Sequence record: NC_014636.1
Direction: 5' to 3' (one strand)
DNA: 64,000 nucleotides
Shown: in pieces, positions 2,591-43,017 of the stretch
Layout of the letters: every line of letters begins with the position of its first letter
Position numbering within the stretch: the stretch's first letter is position 1
The notes under the pieces: model-generated
Database searches by the model: none
What the model was told of the DNA's origin: nothing
Seen by the model: the letters and a program-made list of their open reading frames with translations, nothing else
Position numbers and translations under genes: made by a program

Positions 2591-4033
2591 TTAAGCTTGT
2601 TCGTCGCTGCGGAGTCGGGCTTCTTCAAACACACTCATGTTATAAACATGGGTGCAAGTGCCTTCACGCAGATACTGGACATATTCGTTGTCGTTCTCAT
2701 ATTTCGCATATTGCGGGTCGAGAATATCAACAGTCTTGTATTCACCGTCAATTTTCACCAGACGCAGACGACCGGCTTTGGAAGCTTTCCACGCTGCATC
2801 TTTCGGGTTCTTACGCACACGACGCCAGACACCGTTAACGCGAATCGCAGAGCATTTGTAAGCCCATTTCTGAGTGTCACGGTCGCATTTCTGCAACAGA
2901 CCACCACCCATACCGAAAGCGACGTTTTCGATACTGTAACCCAGCACTTTGATGAACTGGAGACAGGCTTCAACATCTTTGTCGGAACTCAGGCCGTCGC
3001 CCTGAATAACACGGTAGCTACCATGCAGGACTTTGTAACCCTTACTGTTCACAGTGAAACCGACGTTCTTCGCGATAGTTTCAAGAGCATATCCGATATT
3101 ATCAAACATGTCACCAGAGTCAGGACGAATCACGCAAGTACCGCCGCGAGCCAGAATTTCGCGCTTGAACTCACCAGTGGTCAGACGATCTACCGCTGAT
3201 TTGTAGTCGATAGAGTCAGCCACAATCGCGTAAACACCGTCACCCCAGTTACGAATGCTGTTCCAGAATGCTTCATCTTCCTGTTCAGGAGTCAGCAAAC
3301 CTTCATCACCGTAGCAAATGGTAGTGGTGTGTTCGCGAGCCGGAATACTGATACCAACAGCGATATCATGTGCCAGATCGTACAGGTCTTGTGCCATAAT
3401 CAGAGCTTCGACGGTATCGGTACCGATGAAGTTGATCAGATGTGCCAGACCACCCAGCTTTGCCGCTTGTTCACAAGTCGCACCACGAGCACCGAAGTCA
3501 TGCAGACGGGTTTTCAGTACGAAATCGAAATCGGCACCAGTCAGATCGGAGGTTTCTTTCAGATACTTTTTAACGAGTTTCTTGATCTTGAAGCTGATAG
3601 AAGCAACGGTACTGGGATACCAGTGACCACGCAACAGGAAAGTTTCAAGGTGACCACCGAGACTGTAGTTCGGTCCGAAGATTTCAACTACCATAGTCGC
3701 GTTACGACCAGGGATTACTTGACCTTCTTTCGCACCATACAGGTTAACCGGAAGTTTGCCGCCGTTGGTTGCAATATTCATCCACATTTCATATGCGAAC
3801 ATGTCGCGACCGAAGTGGGATTTGAACAACATGTTAGCGCGGTTGACGTCAGCGACGGTCACACCCTGCTCCAGAGTACGCGCAACAAAATGCAAACCGG
3901 AGATCATTACATCATCGTCCACACGCGGCTCAGCGTAAAGACTGATTGCATCGGTCCCAGCTGGGAACTGATACGGATGGCTGATTTTGTAAGAGTCGGT
4001 AGTTACTGCCAGGTTGGTTTTAAATACGTTCAT
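2591..4033 (-). CDS. nadV: nicotinamide phosphoribosyltransferase (NAMPT)
   Basis: TDSYKxSH, LHDFGARG, GTDT, VIRPDSGD, IQGDG, FGMGGGLLQ motifs. Confidence 0.95.
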   Translation of the reverse strand: MNVFKTNLAVTTDSYKISHPYQFPAGTDAISLYAEPRVDDDVMISGLHFVARTLEQGVTVADVNRANMLFKSHFGRDMFAYEMWMNIATNGGKLPVNLYGAKEGQVIPGRNATMVVEIFGPNYSLGGHLETFLLRGHWYPSTVASISFKIKKLVKKYLKETSDLTGADFDFVLKTRLHDFGARGATCEQAAKLGGLAHLINFIGTDTVEALIMAQDLYDLAHDIAVGISIPAREHTTTICYGDEGLLTPEQEDEAFWNSIRNWGDGVYAIVADSIDYKSAVDRLTTGEFKREILARGGTCVIRPDSGDMFDNIGYALETIAKNVGFTVNSKGYKVLHGSYRVIQGDGLSSDKDVEACLQFIKVLGYSIENVAFGMGGGLLQKCDRDTQKWAYKCSAIRVNGVWRRVRKNPKDAAWKASKAGRLRLVKIDGEYKTVDILDPQYAKYENDNEYVQYLREGTCTHVYNMSVFEEARLRSDEQA

Positions 4034-5340: not shown

Positions 5341-5566
5341 CTATAAGTCCTTGTTTCACAGCTTGATTGAATAGAGGATGTGTATCTGTGATGCTCACAT
5401 CCCACATACGCAGAATAAGCGAAACATCCTCTAGTGTCAAGTTTTCTTTTGTGATTTTATACGTTTTCGGGATTCGAAGATGTCCGGATATAAAATCCGG
5501 ACTATAATATCTGAGATTTCGACTATCGAATCCAATTTCGTCTTGATGAAGCGCGTCCATACTCAT
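5327..5566 (-). CDS. hypothetical protein
   Basis: 79-aa ORF, coupled. Confidence 0.7.
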   Translation of the reverse strand: MSMDALHQDEIGFDSRNLRYYSPDFISGHLRIPKTYKITKENLTLEDVSLILRMWDVSITDTHPLFNQAVKQGLIDVPV

Positions 5567-6516
5567 GACAGCAGCTCCGCGAGATAAACCTCATAGACAA
5601 AATCGTCCCAGTATTCACGATTCACAGTTTCGCGCATACCGTTTTTGCGAGCGATCACAACCTCTTTCTCAACATCGTTCATAAGTTGTTCGAGATAGGG
5701 ATTAACTTCGTCTACCAGACTACGCTTTCCTAGCTTAACGTCAAGAATAAATTCACGATGTTTCAGCGGGAATTTCAGATCACCGGTCCGATAGATCTCA
5801 AGCAGTTGTTCACCGCCTCGGATAGCATGACTCAACGCTTTCCAGTCTACACCGACTTCCTCTTTCGCACGTTTAGCGCGATCACCATATTCTTCCCAAA
5901 TCTTCTGGACTTGCTGGATAAACTCGGTGATCTTGATTCCATACAGATACTTGCGACCCAGCACCTCATAGAACTCGACAGTTTCACCGGTTCGGGATAC
6001 TTCGGTACCAGAGAATGTGAATTCATCAGTTGGCAGACGATCAACAAAATAACGGAGACGATAGTTCATGTCCGACTGAGGAATGTTAGAGATAACGGTC
6101 ATCACTCGTTCGAGTGCAGCTAGTCGAGTACCCTTAACACCGTACTTGGTAGCTTGTTTTCGGCAGTAGCCCAAGAATGCATCCATACGAGTCGTGTAAA
6201 ACATAGACCGATTTTGCTGAATGACTTCCCAATAAGGAGAAGTTTCCAGCAGCTGGTTACTGTGCAACATATCGATACACATAGTTTCGCCTTTGCTCGC
6301 CAGCTTGATGAACTGACGCAAAGACATCATTTCGGTATCGATATCATCGGCGCCGTTTTTACCTTTACCACCAGTGCTTTCGTTGTAGACTTCGCGACCA
6401 CCCAGAATGATCTCCCGCTTAGTGGGAATAAAGATCCCTTTGTAGTCCCGATCGGAAGTCGGGGTACTCAGCCCGTACAGATGCGAGCCGAATACGGTTT
6501 TCATCATTGTTTTCAT
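5563..6516 (-). CDS. Pol-beta superfamily nucleotidyltransferase (RlaP/PF10127-like)
   Basis: FGSHLYG...SDRDYKGIF (GS-x-DxD) and WKALSHAIR motifs. Confidence 0.85.
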   Translation of the reverse strand: MKTMMKTVFGSHLYGLSTPTSDRDYKGIFIPTKREIILGGREVYNESTGGKGKNGADDIDTEMMSLRQFIKLASKGETMCIDMLHSNQLLETSPYWEVIQQNRSMFYTTRMDAFLGYCRKQATKYGVKGTRLAALERVMTVISNIPQSDMNYRLRYFVDRLPTDEFTFSGTEVSRTGETVEFYEVLGRKYLYGIKITEFIQQVQKIWEEYGDRAKRAKEEVGVDWKALSHAIRGGEQLLEIYRTGDLKFPLKHREFILDVKLGKRSLVDEVNPYLEQLMNDVEKEVVIARKNGMRETVNREYWDDFVYEVYLAELLS

Positions 6517-9200: not shown

Positions 9201-9255
9201 ATCTTATCAGGTTGAAATGCGTTGTCAACAAAAAAGGCACCCGAAGGTGCCTTTT
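9201..9255 (-). repeat. terminator + early promoter cassette, copy 2
   Basis: Same GGCACCCGAAGGTGCC hairpin + TTGACA-N16-TAAGAT. Confidence 0.85.
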
Positions 9256-9256
9256 A

Positions 9257-12200
9257 TTACTTACAAGCGATGGACAAGAATTTCTCCAAGTCTTTACCCT
9301 TGATTTTCTTACACATAGAATACCGATTGTACTCGGTACGAGTAGCCGGCACGTAAACGGTAACGTGTGAATCGTCGCCGTATTCAAGCTCAACGCCAGT
9401 TGCTGGATTGAACTCTTTTGGATCAACATACTCAATCACACCGTTTTTACGCATCGGGATCATACCGTCATAGAAAGTATAAATCGCGTAGTCTTTGACG
9501 CTTGCGCGTTTTGCTTCTGTCAGCATTTCTCCAAACTTCATCCGGTTACTTTCAACCAGACTACCTTTCATTTTTGATTGATGCTCTTTGTACTTGCTGA
9601 ACGTGTTAAGCTCAACCTCATAGCATTTCAGCACCTTGATTTGTTTCTTAGGATCGAACACCGCCCATTCCGGAGATCTAACGCCGTGATGATCAGTTGG
9701 GTTCGGAACACCAGCAGAACGATAGTCCTTACGACGCTCGCCAAGAATAGATTCCATTTCGAATACATAGCCACGTGTGCCAGAATGACGGCCATAACCT
9801 TCGTTACTCACGTATTGTAGGATCTTGTCAATCTTGTTACTGAAATACAATCCATCACCAAGCATACGACCAACAACAGATTTATCCTTACTTGGAATAA
9901 TCTTGAATCCATAGCGAAGAACCATGTTAGCAGCAATACCGCCTGTTCCGTGGAAACATGGCACAATTTGCTCCAGTTTTCCTTCCGCTTCTTGTTGCTT
10001 CAAGAACTCGTTATACTCTGGATAAGTCATATTAACAGTAAATGATTTATGAATCAACGGATAAGTGTTACCGTGTTTACCAGCGTAATAATTATCAACC
10101 AGATGCTTGCCAATCAAATATTTCTGTTCATCGGTGATGTTATCATCGACAACAGCAGGAGGAGGAACAACAACGTTTGTATCCGCAGCGGCTTCAACGC
10201 GAGCGATATAATCACTGAACGTTTCGCCTTTCTTGGCGCGTATTTTTGCCGATTTAACCAGTTCATCTGGATCAATCTCGTTAAACTCAAACATCTTTTT
10301 AACGCGAGCCATATTTGGCGTATCAAACATGTTGATTGGACCGCCGTGAACTTGCTTGTAAATGAAGTTAATACCAGTCAAAGTAGTCCGAACTTTACCC
10401 TTGTAATAGTCGTCCATGTTTTCATAGAAAGCATTGGCAACCGCTGGATTAGCTTTCATACCGTTAAACATGATATCAACCAATGTTTGCTGTGCTTTCG
10501 CTTTATCATCACGACGACGAATGCCCATCAGATTTTCTTTGTTCATGAACTTAAAGCCGTGTGCAACTTCAAGACGCATAAACTCAGCCGCGGATTCATC
10601 GTCAAAATCAATCTTGTTGACGAAATCATAAGCGAAATCACCAATATAACTGGATTCCATATCATTGCCCAACTTAGCATAAGACATCAGCAACAGCGGA
10701 ACTCTAACGTGTGGATCGCATTGTCCAGAACGACTAACAAATCGTCTCAGTCCGTCTTTAGTCTTGATGTTAGTCAGCAAATAAGAAATGCGATTCTTCA
10801 ATTCATTTCCGGTTGCGGATTCAAGATAAGCTGGCATAAGCTGCATTGCCTGATAAACTTCGGCAGGATTATCGATCTTCTGAATAATCATGTCTCGAAC
10901 TTCATTTGCAACTTCCGGGAACTTTTCCATTGAACGTTTCAGAGCTTCAATCGGCAAATTATCACCAACCAACTTAGCATAGCGAATCATTGCTTTAGCA
11001 AGGGTAGCAATCGCAATAGAAGGCAGAATACGCAATGGAGTATAAACCATCTGCGCCGGACTAGAATTCATAACTTGTTTAACTTCGTAAACGAATTCTT
11101 TATCCTCAAGATAATTCTTCTTGGTCCAATATTCTTCGATGAAACTGAAATTGGCGTTGGTGATATAATCACGTGCCATATAACGGATCATATTCATATA
11201 TTGATGAACCGGCTTTGTTCCAGCTCCCCATGTCGGTAGACTAGGGATCGTCGGATAAATGCTCGCACATTCTTTATTGAAGATATTCACCATAGTAGTA
11301 ATGGCTTTTGTTCCAATAAACACGTCCGATTCGGAGCCAAACAGAGGATTTAACTTCATATCCACACCTTGCTGAGACATCAGAGAAGTTGTGGCGGAAA
11401 TAAAAGTAACTTCCAATCCGTCTACCATTGCAATTCGGCGCTCGTCTGGTGCGTTGTCCAGTCTAATCGCTAGTGTGATAACCATGTCAGTTGTCATGCC
11501 AAAAGACAACGCTTCCATTTTGCTACCAAGTGCCGATCCGAACAACTCATACATGATATCATCGGCACTAAAGCCAAACAACCAGGATTTGTTATCTACT
11601 TTGCTACCAGCGATAGCATATAGGACGGTATATAGTTCAATTGCGCCAGTAAACGGATTATTCTCTCCGTATACGCCATAACGCTTATACAGATTAATGA
11701 AATCGGAACGATTCTTAATGAAGAATGTGTCCTCGTTCATCTTGTAATTGGTTACATCGAAACTGATATTGTCAATTGAACTTGAATGCAACTTAAATTG
11801 ACGACCGTATCCAGCTAGTTTTGTGATAACGTCGGTGAAGCGTTCGCGATATCGGATAAACATTTCTTCCTGTACTGGGTCTACCAATTCGAATTCGAAT
11901 CCGGTTGGCCAGAAGTCGGAGCCGGAAGTGTATGTGTTCGGGTCAAGTGTATTCATTCCAGAAATACCGGATTTATTCTCCGCAATATGCTGACCAACGA
12001 TAGACAATACAGCATCAGCAAAACCACCTTCGTGATCATAAGTCAGATAACCGGGCTTGACAGGTTCAGCAACGGGCTCTGGCGCAACAGGAGCATCACC
12101 AACAACGTCGATAACAGCGTTGGTATCATCACCAGTTGTAGTTTGTGGAATCGCGGTATCGTTATCCTGTGAGTCACCAGCACCAGTACCGGTAGTAACA

Positions 12201-12808
12201 GTGTCCATATTCTTGAATCGAATGCGGCGACTGACATCCCAATAATCTGTAGAGATCTCGGTATGTTTGTTGCGTTGACGGCGCATTTCCTTTGACGCAT
12301 CAATCATGGAAATTGCACTGTTTTTGAATTTTAGTAGAACGTCACGCAGTTTTGGATCTGCTTTCATGATTGCGCTGTTTTTGATGTTCGCAACCCAGGC
12401 ACGGACAATATCGTCATCAACTGTATTAACCACGCCTGATTTACACAGAACAAGGAAACGGGTCATTTCGTTTACCTTGGCAGAGTTGATAAACATATCT
12501 TTATCATGCATCAGCTTAACGATCAGTGAAATATTGTGATTTCGGTCATCGATGTTACTGATTCTCAACTGGGCATCAGTCTTGAAATAACGCTGGATGA
12601 ATTTGATAGTGGTCTGATCGTTGATCTGTCTAGCAGCATTGAAGCTACCCAGGATACCAAGGAAGTTAAATGCAAATGCATTAATGATAGAAGTTTCATC
12701 ATTAACGAATGTAACTTTGGTATCTTTGTCGTATAAAGTATTTTCAGTCAGAAAACGATTATACGCATGATCGTTTTGACTTTCGAATAATTGTTTAGTT
12801 GTTAACAT
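9257..12808 (-). CDS. large PARP-like (H-Y-E) ADP-ribosyltransferase, probably late/virion-packaged
   Basis: C-terminal FHGT...GDGLYFS...SPEWAVF catalytic motifs; GAGG SD before MLTTKQLFE; late promoter upstream. Confidence 0.8.
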   Translation of the reverse strand: MLTTKQLFESQNDHAYNRFLTENTLYDKDTKVTFVNDETSIINAFAFNFLGILGSFNAARQINDQTTIKFIQRYFKTDAQLRISNIDDRNHNISLIVKLMHDKDMFINSAKVNEMTRFLVLCKSGVVNTVDDDIVRAWVANIKNSAIMKADPKLRDVLLKFKNSAISMIDASKEMRRQRNKHTEISTDYWDVSRRIRFKNMDTVTTGTGAGDSQDNDTAIPQTTTGDDTNAVIDVVGDAPVAPEPVAEPVKPGYLTYDHEGGFADAVLSIVGQHIAENKSGISGMNTLDPNTYTSGSDFWPTGFEFELVDPVQEEMFIRYRERFTDVITKLAGYGRQFKLHSSSIDNISFDVTNYKMNEDTFFIKNRSDFINLYKRYGVYGENNPFTGAIELYTVLYAIAGSKVDNKSWLFGFSADDIMYELFGSALGSKMEALSFGMTTDMVITLAIRLDNAPDERRIAMVDGLEVTFISATTSLMSQQGVDMKLNPLFGSESDVFIGTKAITTMVNIFNKECASIYPTIPSLPTWGAGTKPVHQYMNMIRYMARDYITNANFSFIEEYWTKKNYLEDKEFVYEVKQVMNSSPAQMVYTPLRILPSIAIATLAKAMIRYAKLVGDNLPIEALKRSMEKFPEVANEVRDMIIQKIDNPAEVYQAMQLMPAYLESATGNELKNRISYLLTNIKTKDGLRRFVSRSGQCDPHVRVPLLLMSYAKLGNDMESSYIGDFAYDFVNKIDFDDESAAEFMRLEVAHGFKFMNKENLMGIRRRDDKAKAQQTLVDIMFNGMKANPAVANAFYENMDDYYKGKVRTTLTGINFIYKQVHGGPINMFDTPNMARVKKMFEFNEIDPDELVKSAKIRAKKGETFSDYIARVEAAADTNVVVPPPAVVDDNITDEQKYLIGKHLVDNYYAGKHGNTYPLIHKSFTVNMTYPEYNEFLKQQEAEGKLEQIVPCFHGTGGIAANMVLRYGFKIIPSKDKSVVGRMLGDGLYFSNKIDKILQYVSNEGYGRHSGTRGYVFEMESILGERRKDYRSAGVPNPTDHHGVRSPEWAVFDPKKQIKVLKCYEVELNTFSKYKEHQSKMKGSLVESNRMKFGEMLTEAKRASVKDYAIYTFYDGMIPMRKNGVIEYVDPKEFNPATGVELEYGDDSHVTVYVPATRTEYNRYSMCKKIKGKDLEKFLSIACK

Positions 12809-12839
12809 TTTGTTCCTCATTAGTGAACTGATATACGAT

Positions 12840-12847
12840 TATTTAGT
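12840..12847 (-). promoter_or_regulatory. late promoter
   Basis: ACTAAATA about 30 nt upstream of PARP-like start. Confidence 0.65.
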
Positions 12848-12879
12848 GGAACACCGCGAGCGAAGCGAGCTAGAAAGAC

Positions 12880-12971
12880 AAAATAAAATCTCTTATAATA
12901 CTTTAATGAGAATCTACTTTGTCTTTTCGTTAGATATCAATGAGTTAGCGCCTACGGCGCTATCTTCGATT
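12880..12971. repeat. dispersed ~92-bp element, copy 1
   Basis: AAAATAAAATCTCTTAT...TGAGAAT...TCAATGAGTTAGCGCCTACGGCGC(T/A)ATCTTCGATT; same blocks and spacing at 43110-43201. Confidence 0.8.
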
Positions 12972-13851
12972 CGCTAGATTGTTCATTATTTATACCGAGT
13001 ACCTGTTCCATGAACTTATCCGATATGCTATTGATCAGATCTGGTCGCTTGATGTTCTCATGAAGCCAAGGATCAAAATCGCCGCTATGGTGTAACACTG
13101 AATAAGCACCAATCATTGAGCCATAGATACTCGCAACGGTATCGCTATCATAGCCGAGATTCGCTATGTAAAAGATCCCGTTCTGCTTCTTATCAAAGAG
13201 CATAAACGTTCTCCAAGCGATGGTGAGCGAATCCTTGACATACCCCGTAGGCTTGCAGTCTGCATTATCAAAGAACAAGCCAAACTCATTCTGGAGCTGT
13301 TCCTTGCTCGCTCCGTCGATGATTCGATGCATGATACGAACATACAGCAGAGAATACTCCACGACGAACTCGATAGGATGCGTAATCTCGGTCAGTTCTC
13401 GCACAACACTTTCGATCTCTTCTTTGCTTTTCCCATACGTCGCAAACGCAACAGGATAGAATCGCATAAGTGCACCATTACCGCAACCTTTGCTCGCGTC
13501 TGTGATTGGCTTGTCCCGCATTATAGCGTTGTATGTGCTAGTACCAATATCGAAGCATTCACCAGTTGACGAAAACGCACCACGATTGACCCAGCGACGG
13601 ATATCACGCTTAATTCCAGCGATGTCGAATTTGCCATCCTGATAATTGTTCATCGTGATTAGTGCGCAAGTCGTATCATCGGTAAAGTAACCGTAATCGT
13701 GATCAAAGCTGTTTTTCTCTGCTTTCAGCGTCTCGATGTCAATTCGGCGAATCTTCTTGCCGGTATTGAACTCGTTGAAGCTACCAACACAATCACCTAT
13801 GATTGCTGCACTAGATGATTGAATCATCATAAGATTTAAGATAAAGTTCAT
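12952..13851 (-). CDS. ADP-ribosylglycohydrolase (ARH/DraG family)
   Basis: IIGDCVG, YFTDDT, GNGALMR, GYDSDTVASIYG motifs; GGAG SD before MNFIL. Confidence 0.92.
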   Translation of the reverse strand: MNFILNLMMIQSSSAAIIGDCVGSFNEFNTGKKIRRIDIETLKAEKNSFDHDYGYFTDDTTCALITMNNYQDGKFDIAGIKRDIRRWVNRGAFSSTGECFDIGTSTYNAIMRDKPITDASKGCGNGALMRFYPVAFATYGKSKEEIESVVRELTEITHPIEFVVEYSLLYVRIMHRIIDGASKEQLQNEFGLFFDNADCKPTGYVKDSLTIAWRTFMLFDKKQNGIFYIANLGYDSDTVASIYGSMIGAYSVLHHSGDFDPWLHENIKRPDLINSISDKFMEQVLGINNEQSSESKIAP

Positions 13852-42071: not shown

Positions 42072-42250
42072 GATTCGTTTGCTTCCTTAGCTCGTTGTTT
42101 TAGATCGTTAATATACAGAGTTTGATAAATGGTACGTTCGAACGGAGTTGTTAATTCCAATTCATCAATCGACCATCCCTCTTTGTGCATTCGATAATTG
42201 ATATTGAATAGATCGTATATCGAATCGTTAACGAGGGTCAGGCGAAAAAA
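42068..42250 (-). CDS. 51: gp51-like C-terminal module in the -1 frame (not in ORF track)
   Basis: FFRLTLVNDSIYDLFNINYRMHKEGWSIDELELTTPFERTIYQTLYINDLKQRAKEANES; stop overlaps gp29 ATG; no SD/ATG at its 5' end. Confidence 0.75.
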   Translation of the reverse strand, partial: FFRLTLVNDSIYDLFNINYRMHKEGWSIDELELTTPFERTIYQTLYINDLKQRAKEANES

Positions 42251-43017
42251 TCAGACAGACCTACCAGTCTAATTGGCTCAGCGTGTCCACAGTTAGGACA
42301 TTTTAGAGCGATATCGAGAGTAGTCTGAGGAATATCGTTTACAAACTTAGCCATTTTTTCGTAGCCACTACTGTCGATATAGTCCAAGAGTTCGATCAAC
42401 TCTGACGGCTGAATATCGACACCGACTTTCATAACGTCGGAATTTAAATGAACTTCCTCGACACAACGCATGGTAATATCGAACAAGTCAGATTCTTTTT
42501 CAACATCAAAGAACTCAGATTCGTATACCGTTGGATAGCGCATAACAACGGAGAGTTTATCGCTGATCTTAACAACACTTTCCGGAATACGAGACAGTTT
42601 AGCTCTAGCCAGATTCGCATTGACTTTGATTTCTGCACCACACGGACGCATCATCTTATCGCCGTTAGGCAATAGAACAGGATTTCCTTCTTCGTCTGTA
42701 GCTTCGATCTCATTCTGACAGATAAACGTCACTGGAACGATGGAGGTGCCCTTAGACAGCTTCCATACAGCTAGATAGATAGTCTCTATGTCGAATATTG
42801 GCAACGTGTCCAAATCGATTCCAGACGCATCAATGACGCAGTTCTTCAATACTTGAATCATAGCATCTTCCATAGAAGACCCTGATTCACTTGCCAACAT
42901 CAAGATCTTGTACTCTTTCACCAAGAAAGCTCGCACCTTGATCTTTTTACCATTAGACAGTTTGACGCTTGATTGTTGAACAGCCTCAAGCAACATGTCT
43001 TTCGTGAATTTTGCCAT
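42238..43017 (-). CDS. 26: gp26 baseplate hub assembly chaperone
   Basis: KVRAFLVKEYK, CPNCGH, ends GLSDFFA like T4 gp26 GLKEFF. Confidence 0.88.
   Translation of the reverse strand: MAKFTKDMLLEAVQQSSVKLSNGKKIKVRAFLVKEYKILMLASESGSSMEDAMIQVLKNCVIDASGIDLDTLPIFDIETIYLAVWKLSKGTSIVPVTFICQNEIEATDEEGNPVLLPNGDKMMRPCGAEIKVNANLARAKLSRIPESVVKISDKLSVVMRYPTVYESEFFDVEKESDLFDITMRCVEEVHLNSDVMKVGVDIQPSELIELLDYIDSSGYEKMAKFVNDIPQTTLDIALKCPNCGHAEPIRLVGLSDFFA

What the first reader, a model, noticed from the sequence alone, without database searches (positions are those of the whole stretch)
9257..12847. 1184-aa PARP-type ADP-ribosyltransferase that looks virion-packaged
The C-terminal domain has the H-Y-E triad of PARP/diphtheria-toxin-like ARTs: FHGT (~9950), GLYFS (~9846) and SPEWAVF (~9669). 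T4 Alt/ModA/ModB use R-S-E instead. The gene has a late promoter. L-x-E motifs like gp21 prohead-protease sites occur at both ends (QLFE, FLTE, LVES, MLTE), so it may be processed, packaged and ejected like Alt. The ~950-aa N-terminal region is unassigned. A PARP-like gene has been noted in Aeromonas phage Aeh1, but I know of no function for it. A retained catalytic Glu allows poly-ADP-ribosylation or nucleic-acid ADP-ribosylation.
Basis: partly seen in the sequence, partly recalled or inferred. Interest (0 to 1): 0.75.

Follow-up and report, generated by a model that had tools for sequence, protein, structure and literature searches.

The report
Late-expressed PARP-type enzyme, probably head-packaged
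This Aeromonas phage gene encodes a very large protein ending in a PARP-like ADP-ribosyltransferase, and it carries several indirect marks of being made late, trimmed by the head protease and injected into the next host like T4 Alt, but no virion or enzyme data exist yet.

Summary
The gene is real. It is phiAS5 ORF0265, on the minus strand, with start at 12808, stop at 9257-9259, and 1183 aa.

**ART domain.** The C-terminal domain is a PARP-type ART.
- The AlphaFold model has pLDDT 91.
- H953, Y988 and E1047 are invariant in 111 of 111 relatives.

**Family.** The protein belongs to a large family of about 1050-1500 aa proteins, with 364 cluster representatives. Every member whose genome I examined came from a T4-like phage. 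This architecture does not seem to have been described.

**Late expression.** The phage's late motif is CTAAATA, not TATAAATA. One copy lies 31 nt before the ATG and is conserved in four Aeromonas-phage lineages. Similar terminator, late-motif, gene, terminator units occur in two distant phages.

**Processing motifs.**
- The N-terminus carries an [LIVF]-x-E motif before N-S-L-Y, with the Glu kept in 103 of 103 relatives.
- Two conserved [LIVM]-x-E motifs lie in a disordered linker after the ART domain.
- This mirrors T4 Alt, which gp21 cuts at both ends.

**Limits.** Packaging is plausible but unproven, because I found no proteomics. The adjacent ADP-ribosylglycohydrolase has a sigma-70-type promoter, which suggests a timed write/erase pair. 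The PARP-like gene and the ART-ARG pair are already in the literature. An earlier scan note already describes the repeat element upstream of this gene, as found at other loci of this genome.

The parts
12840..12846 (-). Late-promoter motif CTAAATA, 31 nt upstream of the start codon
   Evidence: CTAAATA precedes gp15, gp18-20, gp22-24, the tail fibres and the Alt-like gene in phiAS5. It sits at the same place before the homologues in Aeh1, PX29 and Ahp1_CNU-2021.
12806..12818 (-). Shine-Dalgarno GAGGA (12818-12814) and start codon ATG (12808-12806)
   Evidence: Sequence read; annotated start of ORF0265.
12743..12808 (-). aa 1-22: candidate propeptide / capsid-targeting-like segment with QLFE9 and FLTE22
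   Evidence: pLDDT is about 49. This segment varies in length and sequence across the family, but [LIVF]-x-E is kept: E22 in 103/103, L/I at position 20 in 95/103, N23 in 97/103.
12209..12742 (-). aa 23-200: conserved all-alpha N-terminal domain of unknown fold
   Evidence: pLDDT is 96-98. The domain is found at the N-terminus of 110 of 153 family representatives. No PDB, BFVD or AFDB match outside the family.
12059..12208 (-). aa 201-250: acidic, Pro-rich disordered linker
   Evidence: pLDDT below 50 for residues 205-240; low-complexity, gap-rich columns in the alignment.
10169..12058 (-). aa 251-880: variable all-helical region; aa ~550-800 resemble ARM/HEAT solenoids
9596..10162 (-). aa 883-1071: PARP-type ADP-ribosyltransferase domain (H953, Y988, E1047)
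9497..9574 (-). aa 1079-1104: linker with two conserved [LIVM]-x-E motifs (LVE1086, LTE1098)
   Evidence: E1086 is kept in 101/111 and E1098 in 98/111. Model residues 318-324 (aa 1097-1103) have pLDDT below 50. This parallels the LTE-619 C-terminal cut in T4 Alt.
9260..9490 (-). aa 1107-1183: conserved small beta-rich C-terminal domain, function unknown
   Evidence: pLDDT is about 90-95 with six strands. It is conserved in most of the family. No detectable homology to the Alt C-terminal propeptide.
9230..9251 (-). Intrinsic terminator GGCACC-TTCG-GGTGCC followed by T6
   Evidence: Read. It is conserved with compensatory stem changes in Aeh1, PX29 and Ahp1.
9201..9228 (-). Sigma-70-type promoter TTGACA-16-TAAGAT that restarts early transcription downstream
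12952..13851 (-). Upstream neighbour: ADP-ribosylglycohydrolase (ORF0266)
   Evidence: Pfam PF03747 at E 2.4e-33. The best solved relatives are Lmo0067, a Thermus ARH, Tri1/DraG-type hydrolases and DraG; ARH3 is weaker. Adjacency is kept in Aeh1 and PX29. A sigma-70-like promoter and no CTAAATA lie upstream in all three phages.
12874..12971 (-). Repeated intergenic cassette between the hydrolase and the ART gene: GC mini-hairpin 12960-12948 plus a 17-bp AT-rich hairpin
   Evidence: Seven copies in phiAS5. The AT hairpin is kept with a few compensatory changes, and the cassette is present at this same locus in Aeh1 and PX29.

Best explanation
ORF0265 is an active PARP-type (H-Y-E) ADP-ribosyltransferase fused to a ~880-aa all-helical N-terminal region.

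**Shown in silico.**
- The fold and an intact NAD+ site.
- A self-contained transcription unit: terminator-like hairpin, late motif, gene, terminator.
- Conserved [LIV]-x-E motifs at both ends.

**Inferred.**
- The protein is made late and is taken into the prohead core through its N-terminal segment.
- It is trimmed by the phage's gp21-type prohead protease after E22 (and possibly E9) and after E1086 and/or E1098.
- It is ejected with the DNA into the next host, where it ADP-ribosylates a host macromolecule before any phage gene is expressed.

**More speculative.** The neighbouring hydrolase is transcribed from a sigma-70-type promoter. It may later erase or limit these marks, and it may protect the producing cell while the enzyme accumulates late in infection.
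For: **Enzyme.**
- Model pLDDT 91.
- Foldseek E 2.5e-10 to the PARP1/2 catalytic domains.
- Family profile against PDB sequences: E 7e-9.
- All 111 aligned relatives hit Pfam PARP at E <= 0.01, best 4.6e-11.
- H953, Y988 and E1047 are invariant in 111/111. K995 and Y999 are also invariant. In the ungapped alignment they fall opposite the Lys and the final Tyr of PARP1's SKSANY segment.

**Late unit.**
- CTAAATA is the motif before phiAS5 structural genes and before its Alt-like gene.
- One copy lies 31 nt before this ATG and is kept in Aeh1, PX29 and Ahp1.
- The downstream terminator is kept with compensatory changes.
- A terminator plus xTAAATA also precedes the homologues in an oral T4-like phage, where the same TTTAAATA precedes its tail-tube gene, and in Stenotrophomonas phage Ps15.

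**Processing and packaging.**
- The N-terminus reads M-x(0-20)-[LIVF]-x-E-N-[ST]-[LF]-Y in 103 representatives, with the Glu in 103/103.
- Residues 1-20 have low confidence, ahead of a compact domain.
- Two [LIVM]-x-E motifs lie in a low-confidence linker after the ART domain.
- Aeh1, Ps15, pf16 and RSP15 all encode a gp21-type protease, Peptidase_S77. phiAS5 has an annotated prohead protease.
- gp21 cuts after L/I-x-E. Ten N-terminal residues suffice to target IPIII into the T4 head (PMC9026906).
- T4 Alt is cut at ITE-6 and LTE-619 (PMC5694885).
- In phiAS5, gp22, gp24 and Alt-like also start with [LI]-x-E within 10 residues.
Against: - No virion proteomics, transcriptome or enzyme assay was found for any family member.
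- N-terminal [LI]-x-E is not specific. 14 of 227 genes without the late motif have it, including Acb1. The late gene gp51 has it too.
- The residues after E22 (N-S-L-Y) and the C-terminal beta domain are themselves conserved, so these motifs could be structural rather than cleavage sites.
- There is no sequence or profile similarity to Alt or its propeptides.
- The gene sits in an early-gene region, not in the head cluster.
- Late expression does not by itself mean virion incorporation.
- At 134 kDa the protein is about twice the size of Alt.
- The phiAS5 sequence alone scores under Pfam's PARP cut-off: 19.8-22.1 bits against 26.7.
Confidence: 0.5

Rival explanations
1. The protein is a cytoplasmic toxin-antitoxin-like or write/erase pair. 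The ART and the adjacent ADP-ribosylglycohydrolase act together inside the infected cell, like DraT/DraG or Tre1/Tri1. The ART is not packaged. This is the reading published by Iyer et al. 2022.
For: - ART and ARH are adjacent in three Aeromonas-phage genera.
- The hydrolase's best solved relatives include the Tri1/DraG type.
Against: - The two genes are not an operon. A hairpin, a repeat cassette and a late motif separate them, and their promoter types differ.
- The pairing is missing in Ahp1, in Ps15 and in the oral phage, while the ART family and its terminal motifs persist.
- This reading does not explain the invariant N-terminal [LIV]-x-E or the ~880-aa N-terminal region.
Confidence: 0.25
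2. The protein is made late and acts on nucleic acid rather than on a host protein. For example, it could ADP-ribosylate phage or host DNA/RNA ends or bases to protect phage DNA or to block host nucleic acids. It might or might not also be packaged.
For: - PARP-type and related ARTs are known to modify DNA and RNA (reviews listed).
- The catalytic Glu is retained.
- The enzyme accumulates when phage DNA is being packaged, as inferred from the late motif.
Against: - No nucleic-acid-binding domain was detected in 1183 aa.
- The paired eraser is an ARH. From general knowledge of the field, the known DNA-ADP-ribose erasers are macrodomain or NADAR proteins; no tool result here tests that.
- There is no direct data either way.
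Confidence: 0.12
3. The ART domain works mainly as an NAD+ glycohydrolase or as an auto-modifying structural component, and the conserved terminal motifs are fold elements unrelated to proteolysis.
For: - Residues just after E22 and the C-terminal domain are conserved, which fits structural roles.
- The phage carries NAMPT nearby, so NAD+ turnover matters to it.
Against: - An invariant H-Y-E triad, plus the invariant K995 and Y999 in the same segment as PARP1's SKSANY, is typical of transferases.
- The N-terminal segment before E22 varies freely in length and sequence, as expected of a propeptide.
Confidence: 0.08

Closest known systems
T4 Alt (head-packaged ADP-ribosyltransferase processed by gp21)
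   Same: - Made late in a T4-like phage.
- [LI]-x-E close to the N-terminus and again some 60-100 residues from the C-terminus. T4 Alt is cut at ITE-6 and LTE-619.
- ART domain in the C-terminal half.
- The gene lies outside the head-gene cluster and is bounded by its own signals.
   Different: - A different ART clade: H-Y-E PARP type, against R-S-E (PF03496).
- No sequence or profile similarity.
- About twice the size, with an orphan ~880-aa helical region and a folded C-terminal domain.
- phiAS5 has its own separate Alt-like gene.
- Packaging is unproven here.
Eukaryotic PARP catalytic domains (PARP1/2, tankyrases, PARP10)
   Same: - H-Y-E triad, plus K995 and Y999 opposite the Lys and final Tyr of PARP1's SKSANY segment.
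   Different: - About 19% identity.
- No WGR, zinc-finger, BRCT or macro domain, and no clearly matched helical regulatory domain.
- Phage context.
- Polymer synthesis is not shown.
Aeromonas phage Aeh1 PARP-like protein (Aeh1p141) and the phage 'PART' family of Iyer et al. 2022
   Same: A direct homologue: 44% identity over the full length, with the same neighbour genes. It is listed in the literature as a putative functional PARP of unknown function.
   Different: As far as I could find, the literature notes only the domain and the ART-ARG pairing. It does not describe the full-length family architecture, the late transcription unit or the terminal [LIV]-x-E motifs.
DraT/DraG and Tre1/Tri1 ART-hydrolase pairs
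   Same: An ADP-ribosyltransferase sits next to an ADP-ribosylglycohydrolase-fold protein that could reverse its marks.
   Different: - These ARTs belong to other clades.
- Here the two genes have different promoter types and a hairpin between them.
- The pairing is limited to three Aeromonas-phage genera.

Membership tests
PARP / diphtheria-toxin-like (H-Y-E) ADP-ribosyltransferases, Pfam PF00644 | Sequence match to the PARP catalytic-domain profile | tested here: inconclusive
   phiAS5 alone scores 19.8-22.1 bits, under the 26.7-bit cut-off. All 111 relatives match at E <= 0.01, best 4.6e-11. The family profile finds PARP1 at E 7e-9.
PARP / diphtheria-toxin-like (H-Y-E) ADP-ribosyltransferases, Pfam PF00644 | ART fold | tested here: met
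   [not shown]
PARP / diphtheria-toxin-like (H-Y-E) ADP-ribosyltransferases, Pfam PF00644 | His-Tyr-Glu catalytic triad | tested here: met
   H953, Y988 and E1047 are invariant in 111/111. H and Y align with the His of PARP1's WHGS and the Tyr of GIYFA. E1047 lies 23 residues before the end of the structural match, where the PARP1 catalytic Glu lies 22 before it.
PARP / diphtheria-toxin-like (H-Y-E) ADP-ribosyltransferases, Pfam PF00644 | NAD+-dependent ADP-ribose transfer (mono or poly) | not testable with these tools
   Needs an enzyme assay.
DNA-dependent PARPs (PARP1-3 type) | Helical regulatory domain and WGR/DNA-sensing domains before the ART domain | tested here: not met
   No Pfam hit other than PARP. 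Structural alignments to whole catalytic fragments add only about 8-10 aligned residues beyond the ART core.
T4 Alt-type head-packaged ARTs | Homology to Alt (R-S-E, PF03496) | tested here: not met
   BLASTP E >= 0.57. hhalign of the C-terminal tails gives probability 0.4%. The phage's true Alt-like gene is ORF0045.
T4 Alt-type head-packaged ARTs | Late promoter | tested here: met
   CTAAATA lies 31 nt upstream and is conserved in four lineages. The same motif precedes the Alt-like gene.
T4 Alt-type head-packaged ARTs | gp21 cleavage motifs L/I-x-E near both termini | tested here: met
   Motifs at aa 20-22, 1084-1086 and 1096-1098 are conserved across the family. This shows the motifs only; cleavage itself was not tested.
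T4 Alt-type head-packaged ARTs | Presence in purified virions and ejection into the host | not testable with these tools
   No proteomic data were found in the searchable literature.
ART-hydrolase toxin/immunity pairs (DraT-DraG, Tre1-Tri1) | ART and hydrolase encoded together and co-expressed | tested here: not met
   The genes are adjacent in phiAS5, Aeh1 and PX29. They are separated by a hairpin, a repeat cassette and a late motif, and the hydrolase has a sigma-70-like promoter. The pair is absent in Ahp1, Ps15 and the oral phage.
MuF-fused / polyvalent head-packaged effectors | MuF, portal or polyvalent-protein domains fused to the effector | tested here: not met
   No such Pfam or PHROG hit. 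The only BFVD 'polyvalent' row has E 0.016 and TM 0.11.

The most novel reading that the evidence does not exclude
A widespread family of 1000-1500-aa PARP-type enzymes is a second, unrecognised class of head-packaged effectors of T4-like phages.
- The enzymes are targeted to the prohead by a short N-terminal [LI]-x-E segment and released or activated by prohead-protease cuts at both ends.
- They are injected to ADP-ribosylate host targets at time zero.
- In some lineages an early-expressed ADP-ribosylglycohydrolase then erases the marks, giving a timed write/erase switch.
- The cleaved-off C-terminal domain may act as a safety catch in the producing cell.
Probability: 0.3. Interest if true: 0.8.

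Novelty: new variant of a known kind. Interest (0 to 1): 0.6.

Why it matters
PARP-like genes in phages have been listed for over ten years as "putative, function unknown". If this family is delivered in the virion, ADP-ribosylation at the moment of injection is not a peculiarity of T4 Alt and its R-S-E relatives. It would then be a general strategy that has recruited the PARP clade as well, in phages of Aeromonas, Stenotrophomonas, Xanthomonas, Pseudomonas, Ralstonia and uncultured hosts.

The work here yields concrete, cheap predictions:
- mature termini at N23 and at E1086 or E1098;
- late transcripts;
- E1047-dependent activity;
- reversal by the neighbouring hydrolase.

It also defines an orphan ~180-aa N-terminal domain shared by more than 100 protein clusters. 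That domain may be the packaging or target-recognition module.

Tried and rejected
1. **TATAAATA as the late promoter.** The only perfect copy in the window (12994-12987) lies inside the 3' end of the hydrolase gene. The genome has just four copies, and this one is not kept in Aeh1 or PX29. I rejected it in favour of CTAAATA.
2. **Homology between this protein and Alt.**
   - Whole-protein BLASTP gave nothing significant.
   - A tempting local match, GSLVE...MLTEAK against GRLVE...MTEAKK, did not hold up. The Alt C-terminal site homologous to T4 LTE-619 is INE before VVYDGD.
   - hhalign of the two tails gave probability 0.4%.
3. **N-terminal [LI]-x-E plus a late motif as a genome-wide detector of packaged proteins.** The enrichment is modest (6/30 against 14/227). 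The hits include gp51 and a homing endonuclease, and non-late hits include Acb1. It is too unspecific to use alone.
4. **A fold for the N-terminal 800 aa.** PDB, BFVD, AFDB clusters and a Foldseek-independent search gave only generic ARM/HEAT-like similarity for aa ~550-800, and nothing for the N-domain. The ESM Atlas feature search was uninformative.
5. **Virion proteomics in the literature.** I checked papers on pf16, Ps15, Xanthomonas phage X1 and an Ochrobactrum phage, plus general Aeromonas-phage searches. None reports this protein.
6. **Public sequencing runs.** Only metagenomes and wastewater RNA libraries hold the sequence, and none is a timed infection. I did not lay reads.
7. **Rfam on the upstream region.** No match.
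8. **NAD+ salvage linkage.** ORF0256, annotated as a nucleotidyltransferase, is RlaP-type and not NMNAT. Only NAMPT is confirmed nearby.


Full report
**Identity and boundaries**

The window is Aeromonas phage phiAS5 (Straboviridae, Chrysonvirus), bases 161269-225268. The finding is ORF0265. The open frame runs from 12820 to 9257 on the minus strand. The ATG at 12808 follows a GAGGA Shine-Dalgarno and is the annotated start, which gives 1183 aa.

**The C-terminal domain is a PARP-type ADP-ribosyltransferase**

- Alone, the protein scores below Pfam's PARP cut-off (19.8 bits against 26.7), and phmmer finds no solved relative.
- An exhaustive HMMER search with aa 900-1183 found 364 cluster representatives at E <= 0.001, of which 180 are at E <= 1e-30.
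- With 111 of them aligned (A3), AlphaFold gave a model of aa 780-1183 with mean pLDDT 91.
- Foldseek's top PDB matches are all PARP1/PARP2 catalytic fragments, best E 2.5e-10.
- The family profile finds PARP1 by sequence at E 7e-9. It aligns FHGT with WHGS and GLYFS with GIYFA.
- K995 and Y999 are invariant. In the ungapped alignment they fall opposite the Lys and the final Tyr of PARP1's SKSANY segment.
- H953, Y988 and E1047 are invariant in 111 of 111 sequences, and every member hits Pfam PARP.

The ART fold and an intact NAD+ site are therefore established in silico. Whether the enzyme makes polymers cannot be told. H-Y-E is necessary but not sufficient, and no PARP helical regulatory domain or DNA-sensing domain is evident.

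**A large family with a fixed architecture**

- The relatives have a median length of 1242 aa, with the ART domain near the C-terminus.
- In 110 of 153 representatives, the first ~200 residues are homologous to aa 20-200 of ORF0265.
- The middle of the protein (aa 250-780) is alignable only within the Aeromonas clade.
- Isolates carrying family members include Aeromonas phages of four lineages, plus Stenotrophomonas (Menderavirus), Xanthomonas, Pseudomonas pf16 and Ralstonia RSP15 phages.
- An uncultured oral T4-like phage carries two paralogues in tandem.
- Sources name all of them "hypothetical" or "PARP catalytic domain protein".

The model of aa 1-800 has mean pLDDT 72.6.
- It shows a compact all-alpha N-domain (aa ~22-200, pLDDT 96-98) and a disordered acidic, proline-rich linker (205-245).
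- A poorly predicted helical stretch follows, and then a better-predicted helical region (aa ~555-800).
- No PDB, BFVD or AFDB match outside the family was found for the N-domain.

**Late expression**

- The T4 late consensus TATAAATA occurs only four times in the 225-kb genome, so it is not this phage's late promoter.
- Upstream of gp15, gp18-20, the prohead core genes, gp22, gp23, gp24, the tail-fibre genes and the Alt-like gene, the shared motif is CTAAATA (occasionally ATAAATA), 10-60 nt before the start.
- One CTAAATA sits at 12846-12840, 31 nt before the ORF0265 ATG.
- The same motif at the same distance precedes the homologues in Aeh1, PX29 and Ahp1_CNU-2021, which share only 35-74% protein identity.
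- Directly after the stop codon lies a strong intrinsic terminator (9251-9230), kept in all four lineages with compensatory stem changes. A sigma-70-type promoter follows and restarts transcription of the downstream early genes.
- In Stenotrophomonas phage Ps15, the homologue is flanked by annotated terminators, and GATAAATA lies 28 nt before its ATG.
- In the oral phage, a terminator and TTTAAATA precede the gene, and the same TTTAAATA precedes that phage's tail-tube gene.

The gene is thus a monocistronic, late-type unit embedded in an early region. This arrangement recurs in three distant lineages.

**Signs of prohead-protease processing**

- Published work shows that T4 gp21 cuts after L/I-x-E, and that ten N-terminal residues of IPIII suffice to target a protein into the head (PMC9026906).
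- It also shows that T4 Alt is cut at both ends, at ITE-6 and at LTE-619, which removes 63 C-terminal residues (PMC5694885).
- In the ORF0265 family the N-terminus reads M, then 0-20 variable residues, then [LIVF]-x-E-N-[ST]-[LF]-Y.
  - The Glu (E22) is present in 103 of 103 aligned representatives.
  - Position 20 is L or I in 95, and N23 is present in 97.
- Many members begin MLLSENSLY or MKSFKDYLxENSLY.
- From my memory of the T4 literature, these resemble Alt's MELITE and the IPIII targeting sequence. The Alt N-terminus was confirmed from the T4 record. The IPIII sequence was not fetched.
- Residues 1-20 of ORF0265 are low-confidence in the model, ahead of the compact domain.
- The Aeromonas proteins have an extra L-F-E at residues 7-9. 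This resembles the N-termini of phiAS5 gp22 (MLKDQLLAE), gp24 (MLKDLIAE) and Alt-like (MSIKDMLLTE).
- After the ART domain, two [LIVM]-x-E motifs are conserved: E1086 in 101/111 and E1098 in 98/111.
- They lie in the only low-confidence segment of the C-terminal model, with residues 1097-1103 below pLDDT 50. This segment sits just before a folded beta-rich domain, aa 1107-1183.
- Aeh1, Ps15, pf16 and RSP15 each encode a gp21-type protease (Peptidase_S77). phiAS5 has an annotated one.

**Cautions**

- No proteomic, transcriptomic or biochemical data were found for any member.
- N-terminal [LI]-x-E is found in 6 of 30 late-motif genes and also in 14 of 227 others. Among these are gp51 and Acb1, which are not head proteins.
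- The whole protein has no excess of [LI]-x-E motifs: 7 observed against 9.1 +/- 2.6 expected.
- The residues after E22 and the C-terminal domain are conserved, so the motifs may have structural roles.
- There is no homology with Alt or its propeptides.

I therefore rate packaging as somewhat more likely than not, but unproven.

**The neighbouring hydrolase**

- ORF0266 (12952-13851, minus strand) is an ADP-ribosylglycohydrolase (Pfam E 2.4e-33).
- Its closest solved relatives are bacterial ARHs and DraG/Tri1-type hydrolases at E 1e-18 to 1e-9. ARH3 is weaker, at about 7e-6.
- The adjacency is conserved in three genera but is absent in Ahp1, Ps15 and the oral phage.
- In all three phages that have the pair, the hydrolase has a sigma-70-like promoter and no CTAAATA.
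- The two genes are separated by a hairpin, a repeat cassette and the late motif.

This argues against a simple co-transcribed toxin-antitoxin operon. It fits a temporal division in which the hydrolase is made early and the transferase late. That division is inference.

**What is known already**

- Perina et al. 2014 listed the Aeh1 PARP with an H-Y-E triad.
- Suskiewicz et al. 2023 call it a putative functional PARP-like protein of unknown function.
- Iyer et al. 2022 count "PART (PARP)" among the commonest viral ART families and argue in general that myovirus ARTs are often head-packaged. [quoted passage not shown]

I did not find the following in the literature:
- the full-length family architecture;
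- the correct late motif and the conserved late transcription unit;
- the invariant terminal [LIV]-x-E motifs, with their parallel to the two-ended processing of Alt;
- the early/late split of eraser and writer.

**Verdict**

The ART assignment is solid. The packaging hypothesis is strengthened but remains circumstantial. The finding is a new variant of a known kind: a head-delivered ART, but of the PARP clade and with a large orphan N-terminal region. It is directly testable by virion mass spectrometry.

Noticed in passing
window 12874-12971 (-); other copies at genome 7763-7860 (+), 45911-46008 (+), 89727-89802 (-), 115139-115220 (-), 134385-134511 (-), 204372-204490 (-): A repeated intergenic cassette occurs seven times in phiAS5 and at this same locus in Aeh1 and PX29. 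It consists of a GC mini-hairpin (GCGCC-GTA-GGCGC, with a GCGGC/GCCGC covarying form), a 17-bp AT-rich hairpin and TATAAGAGATTTTATTTT. Three copies are followed by a CTAAATA late motif (before gp15, ORF0265 and gp51). An earlier scan note reads it as a possible easily unwound DNA site such as a replication start. Rfam has no match.
   Followed up: partly
whole genome (G000); window 12987-12994: phiAS5 uses CTAAATA (sometimes ATAAATA) as its late motif. The T4 consensus TATAAATA occurs only 4 times in 225 kb, and the single copy in this window lies inside the hydrolase gene and looks incidental.
   Followed up: yes
window 12948-12960 (-): The stop codon (TAG, 12954-12952) of the ADP-ribosylglycohydrolase gene sits in the loop of the GC mini-hairpin of the repeat cassette.
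   Followed up: no
window 38240-38735 (-): A 165-aa protein matches Pfam Acb1 (anti-CBASS nuclease) at E 8e-33. Its N-terminus, MIRSFSEFITE, looks like a capsid-targeting sequence by chance.
   Followed up: partly
window 42240-43017 (-): A T4 baseplate protein (PF12322, gp51-like) is preceded by a copy of the repeat cassette and a CTAAATA motif. Its N-terminus, MAKFTKDMLLE, also carries L-x-E although it is not a head protein.
   Followed up: partly
window 2594-4033 (-) and 5566-6516 (-): Nicotinamide phosphoribosyltransferase (NAMPT) lies 5-10 kb from the ART/ARH pair. In Stenotrophomonas phage Ps15 the PARP-like gene also lies about 4 kb from Nudix and NAMPT genes. The gene annotated 'nucleotidyltransferase' (ORF0256) is RlaP-type (RNA repair), not an NMN adenylyltransferase.
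   Followed up: partly
L010:33852-34418 (-) (genome 143852-144418, ORF0206): A 188-aa protein of unknown function starts MKTLAEFLAE followed by SH. As far as I recall the T4 IPII/IPIII capsid-targeting sequence, it is very close to it, which makes this protein a candidate internal head protein.
   Followed up: no
L017:10001-13141 and L017:13955-18583: A 137-kb T4-like phage contig from an oral metagenome carries two tandem PARP-type paralogues (1046 and 1542 aa) between regA and the DNA polymerase gene. Both start with [LV]-x-E-N-S-L-Y.
   Followed up: partly
L011:33374-35317 (+) (genome 33374-35317, ORF0045): phiAS5 also has a true Alt-like R-S-E ART (PF03496) with a CTAAATA motif and the N-terminus MSIKDMLLTE. 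It has a conserved INE before VVYDGD that aligns with the T4 Alt LTE-619 cleavage site, so two-ended processing of Alt is probably conserved in Aeromonas phages.
   Followed up: partly
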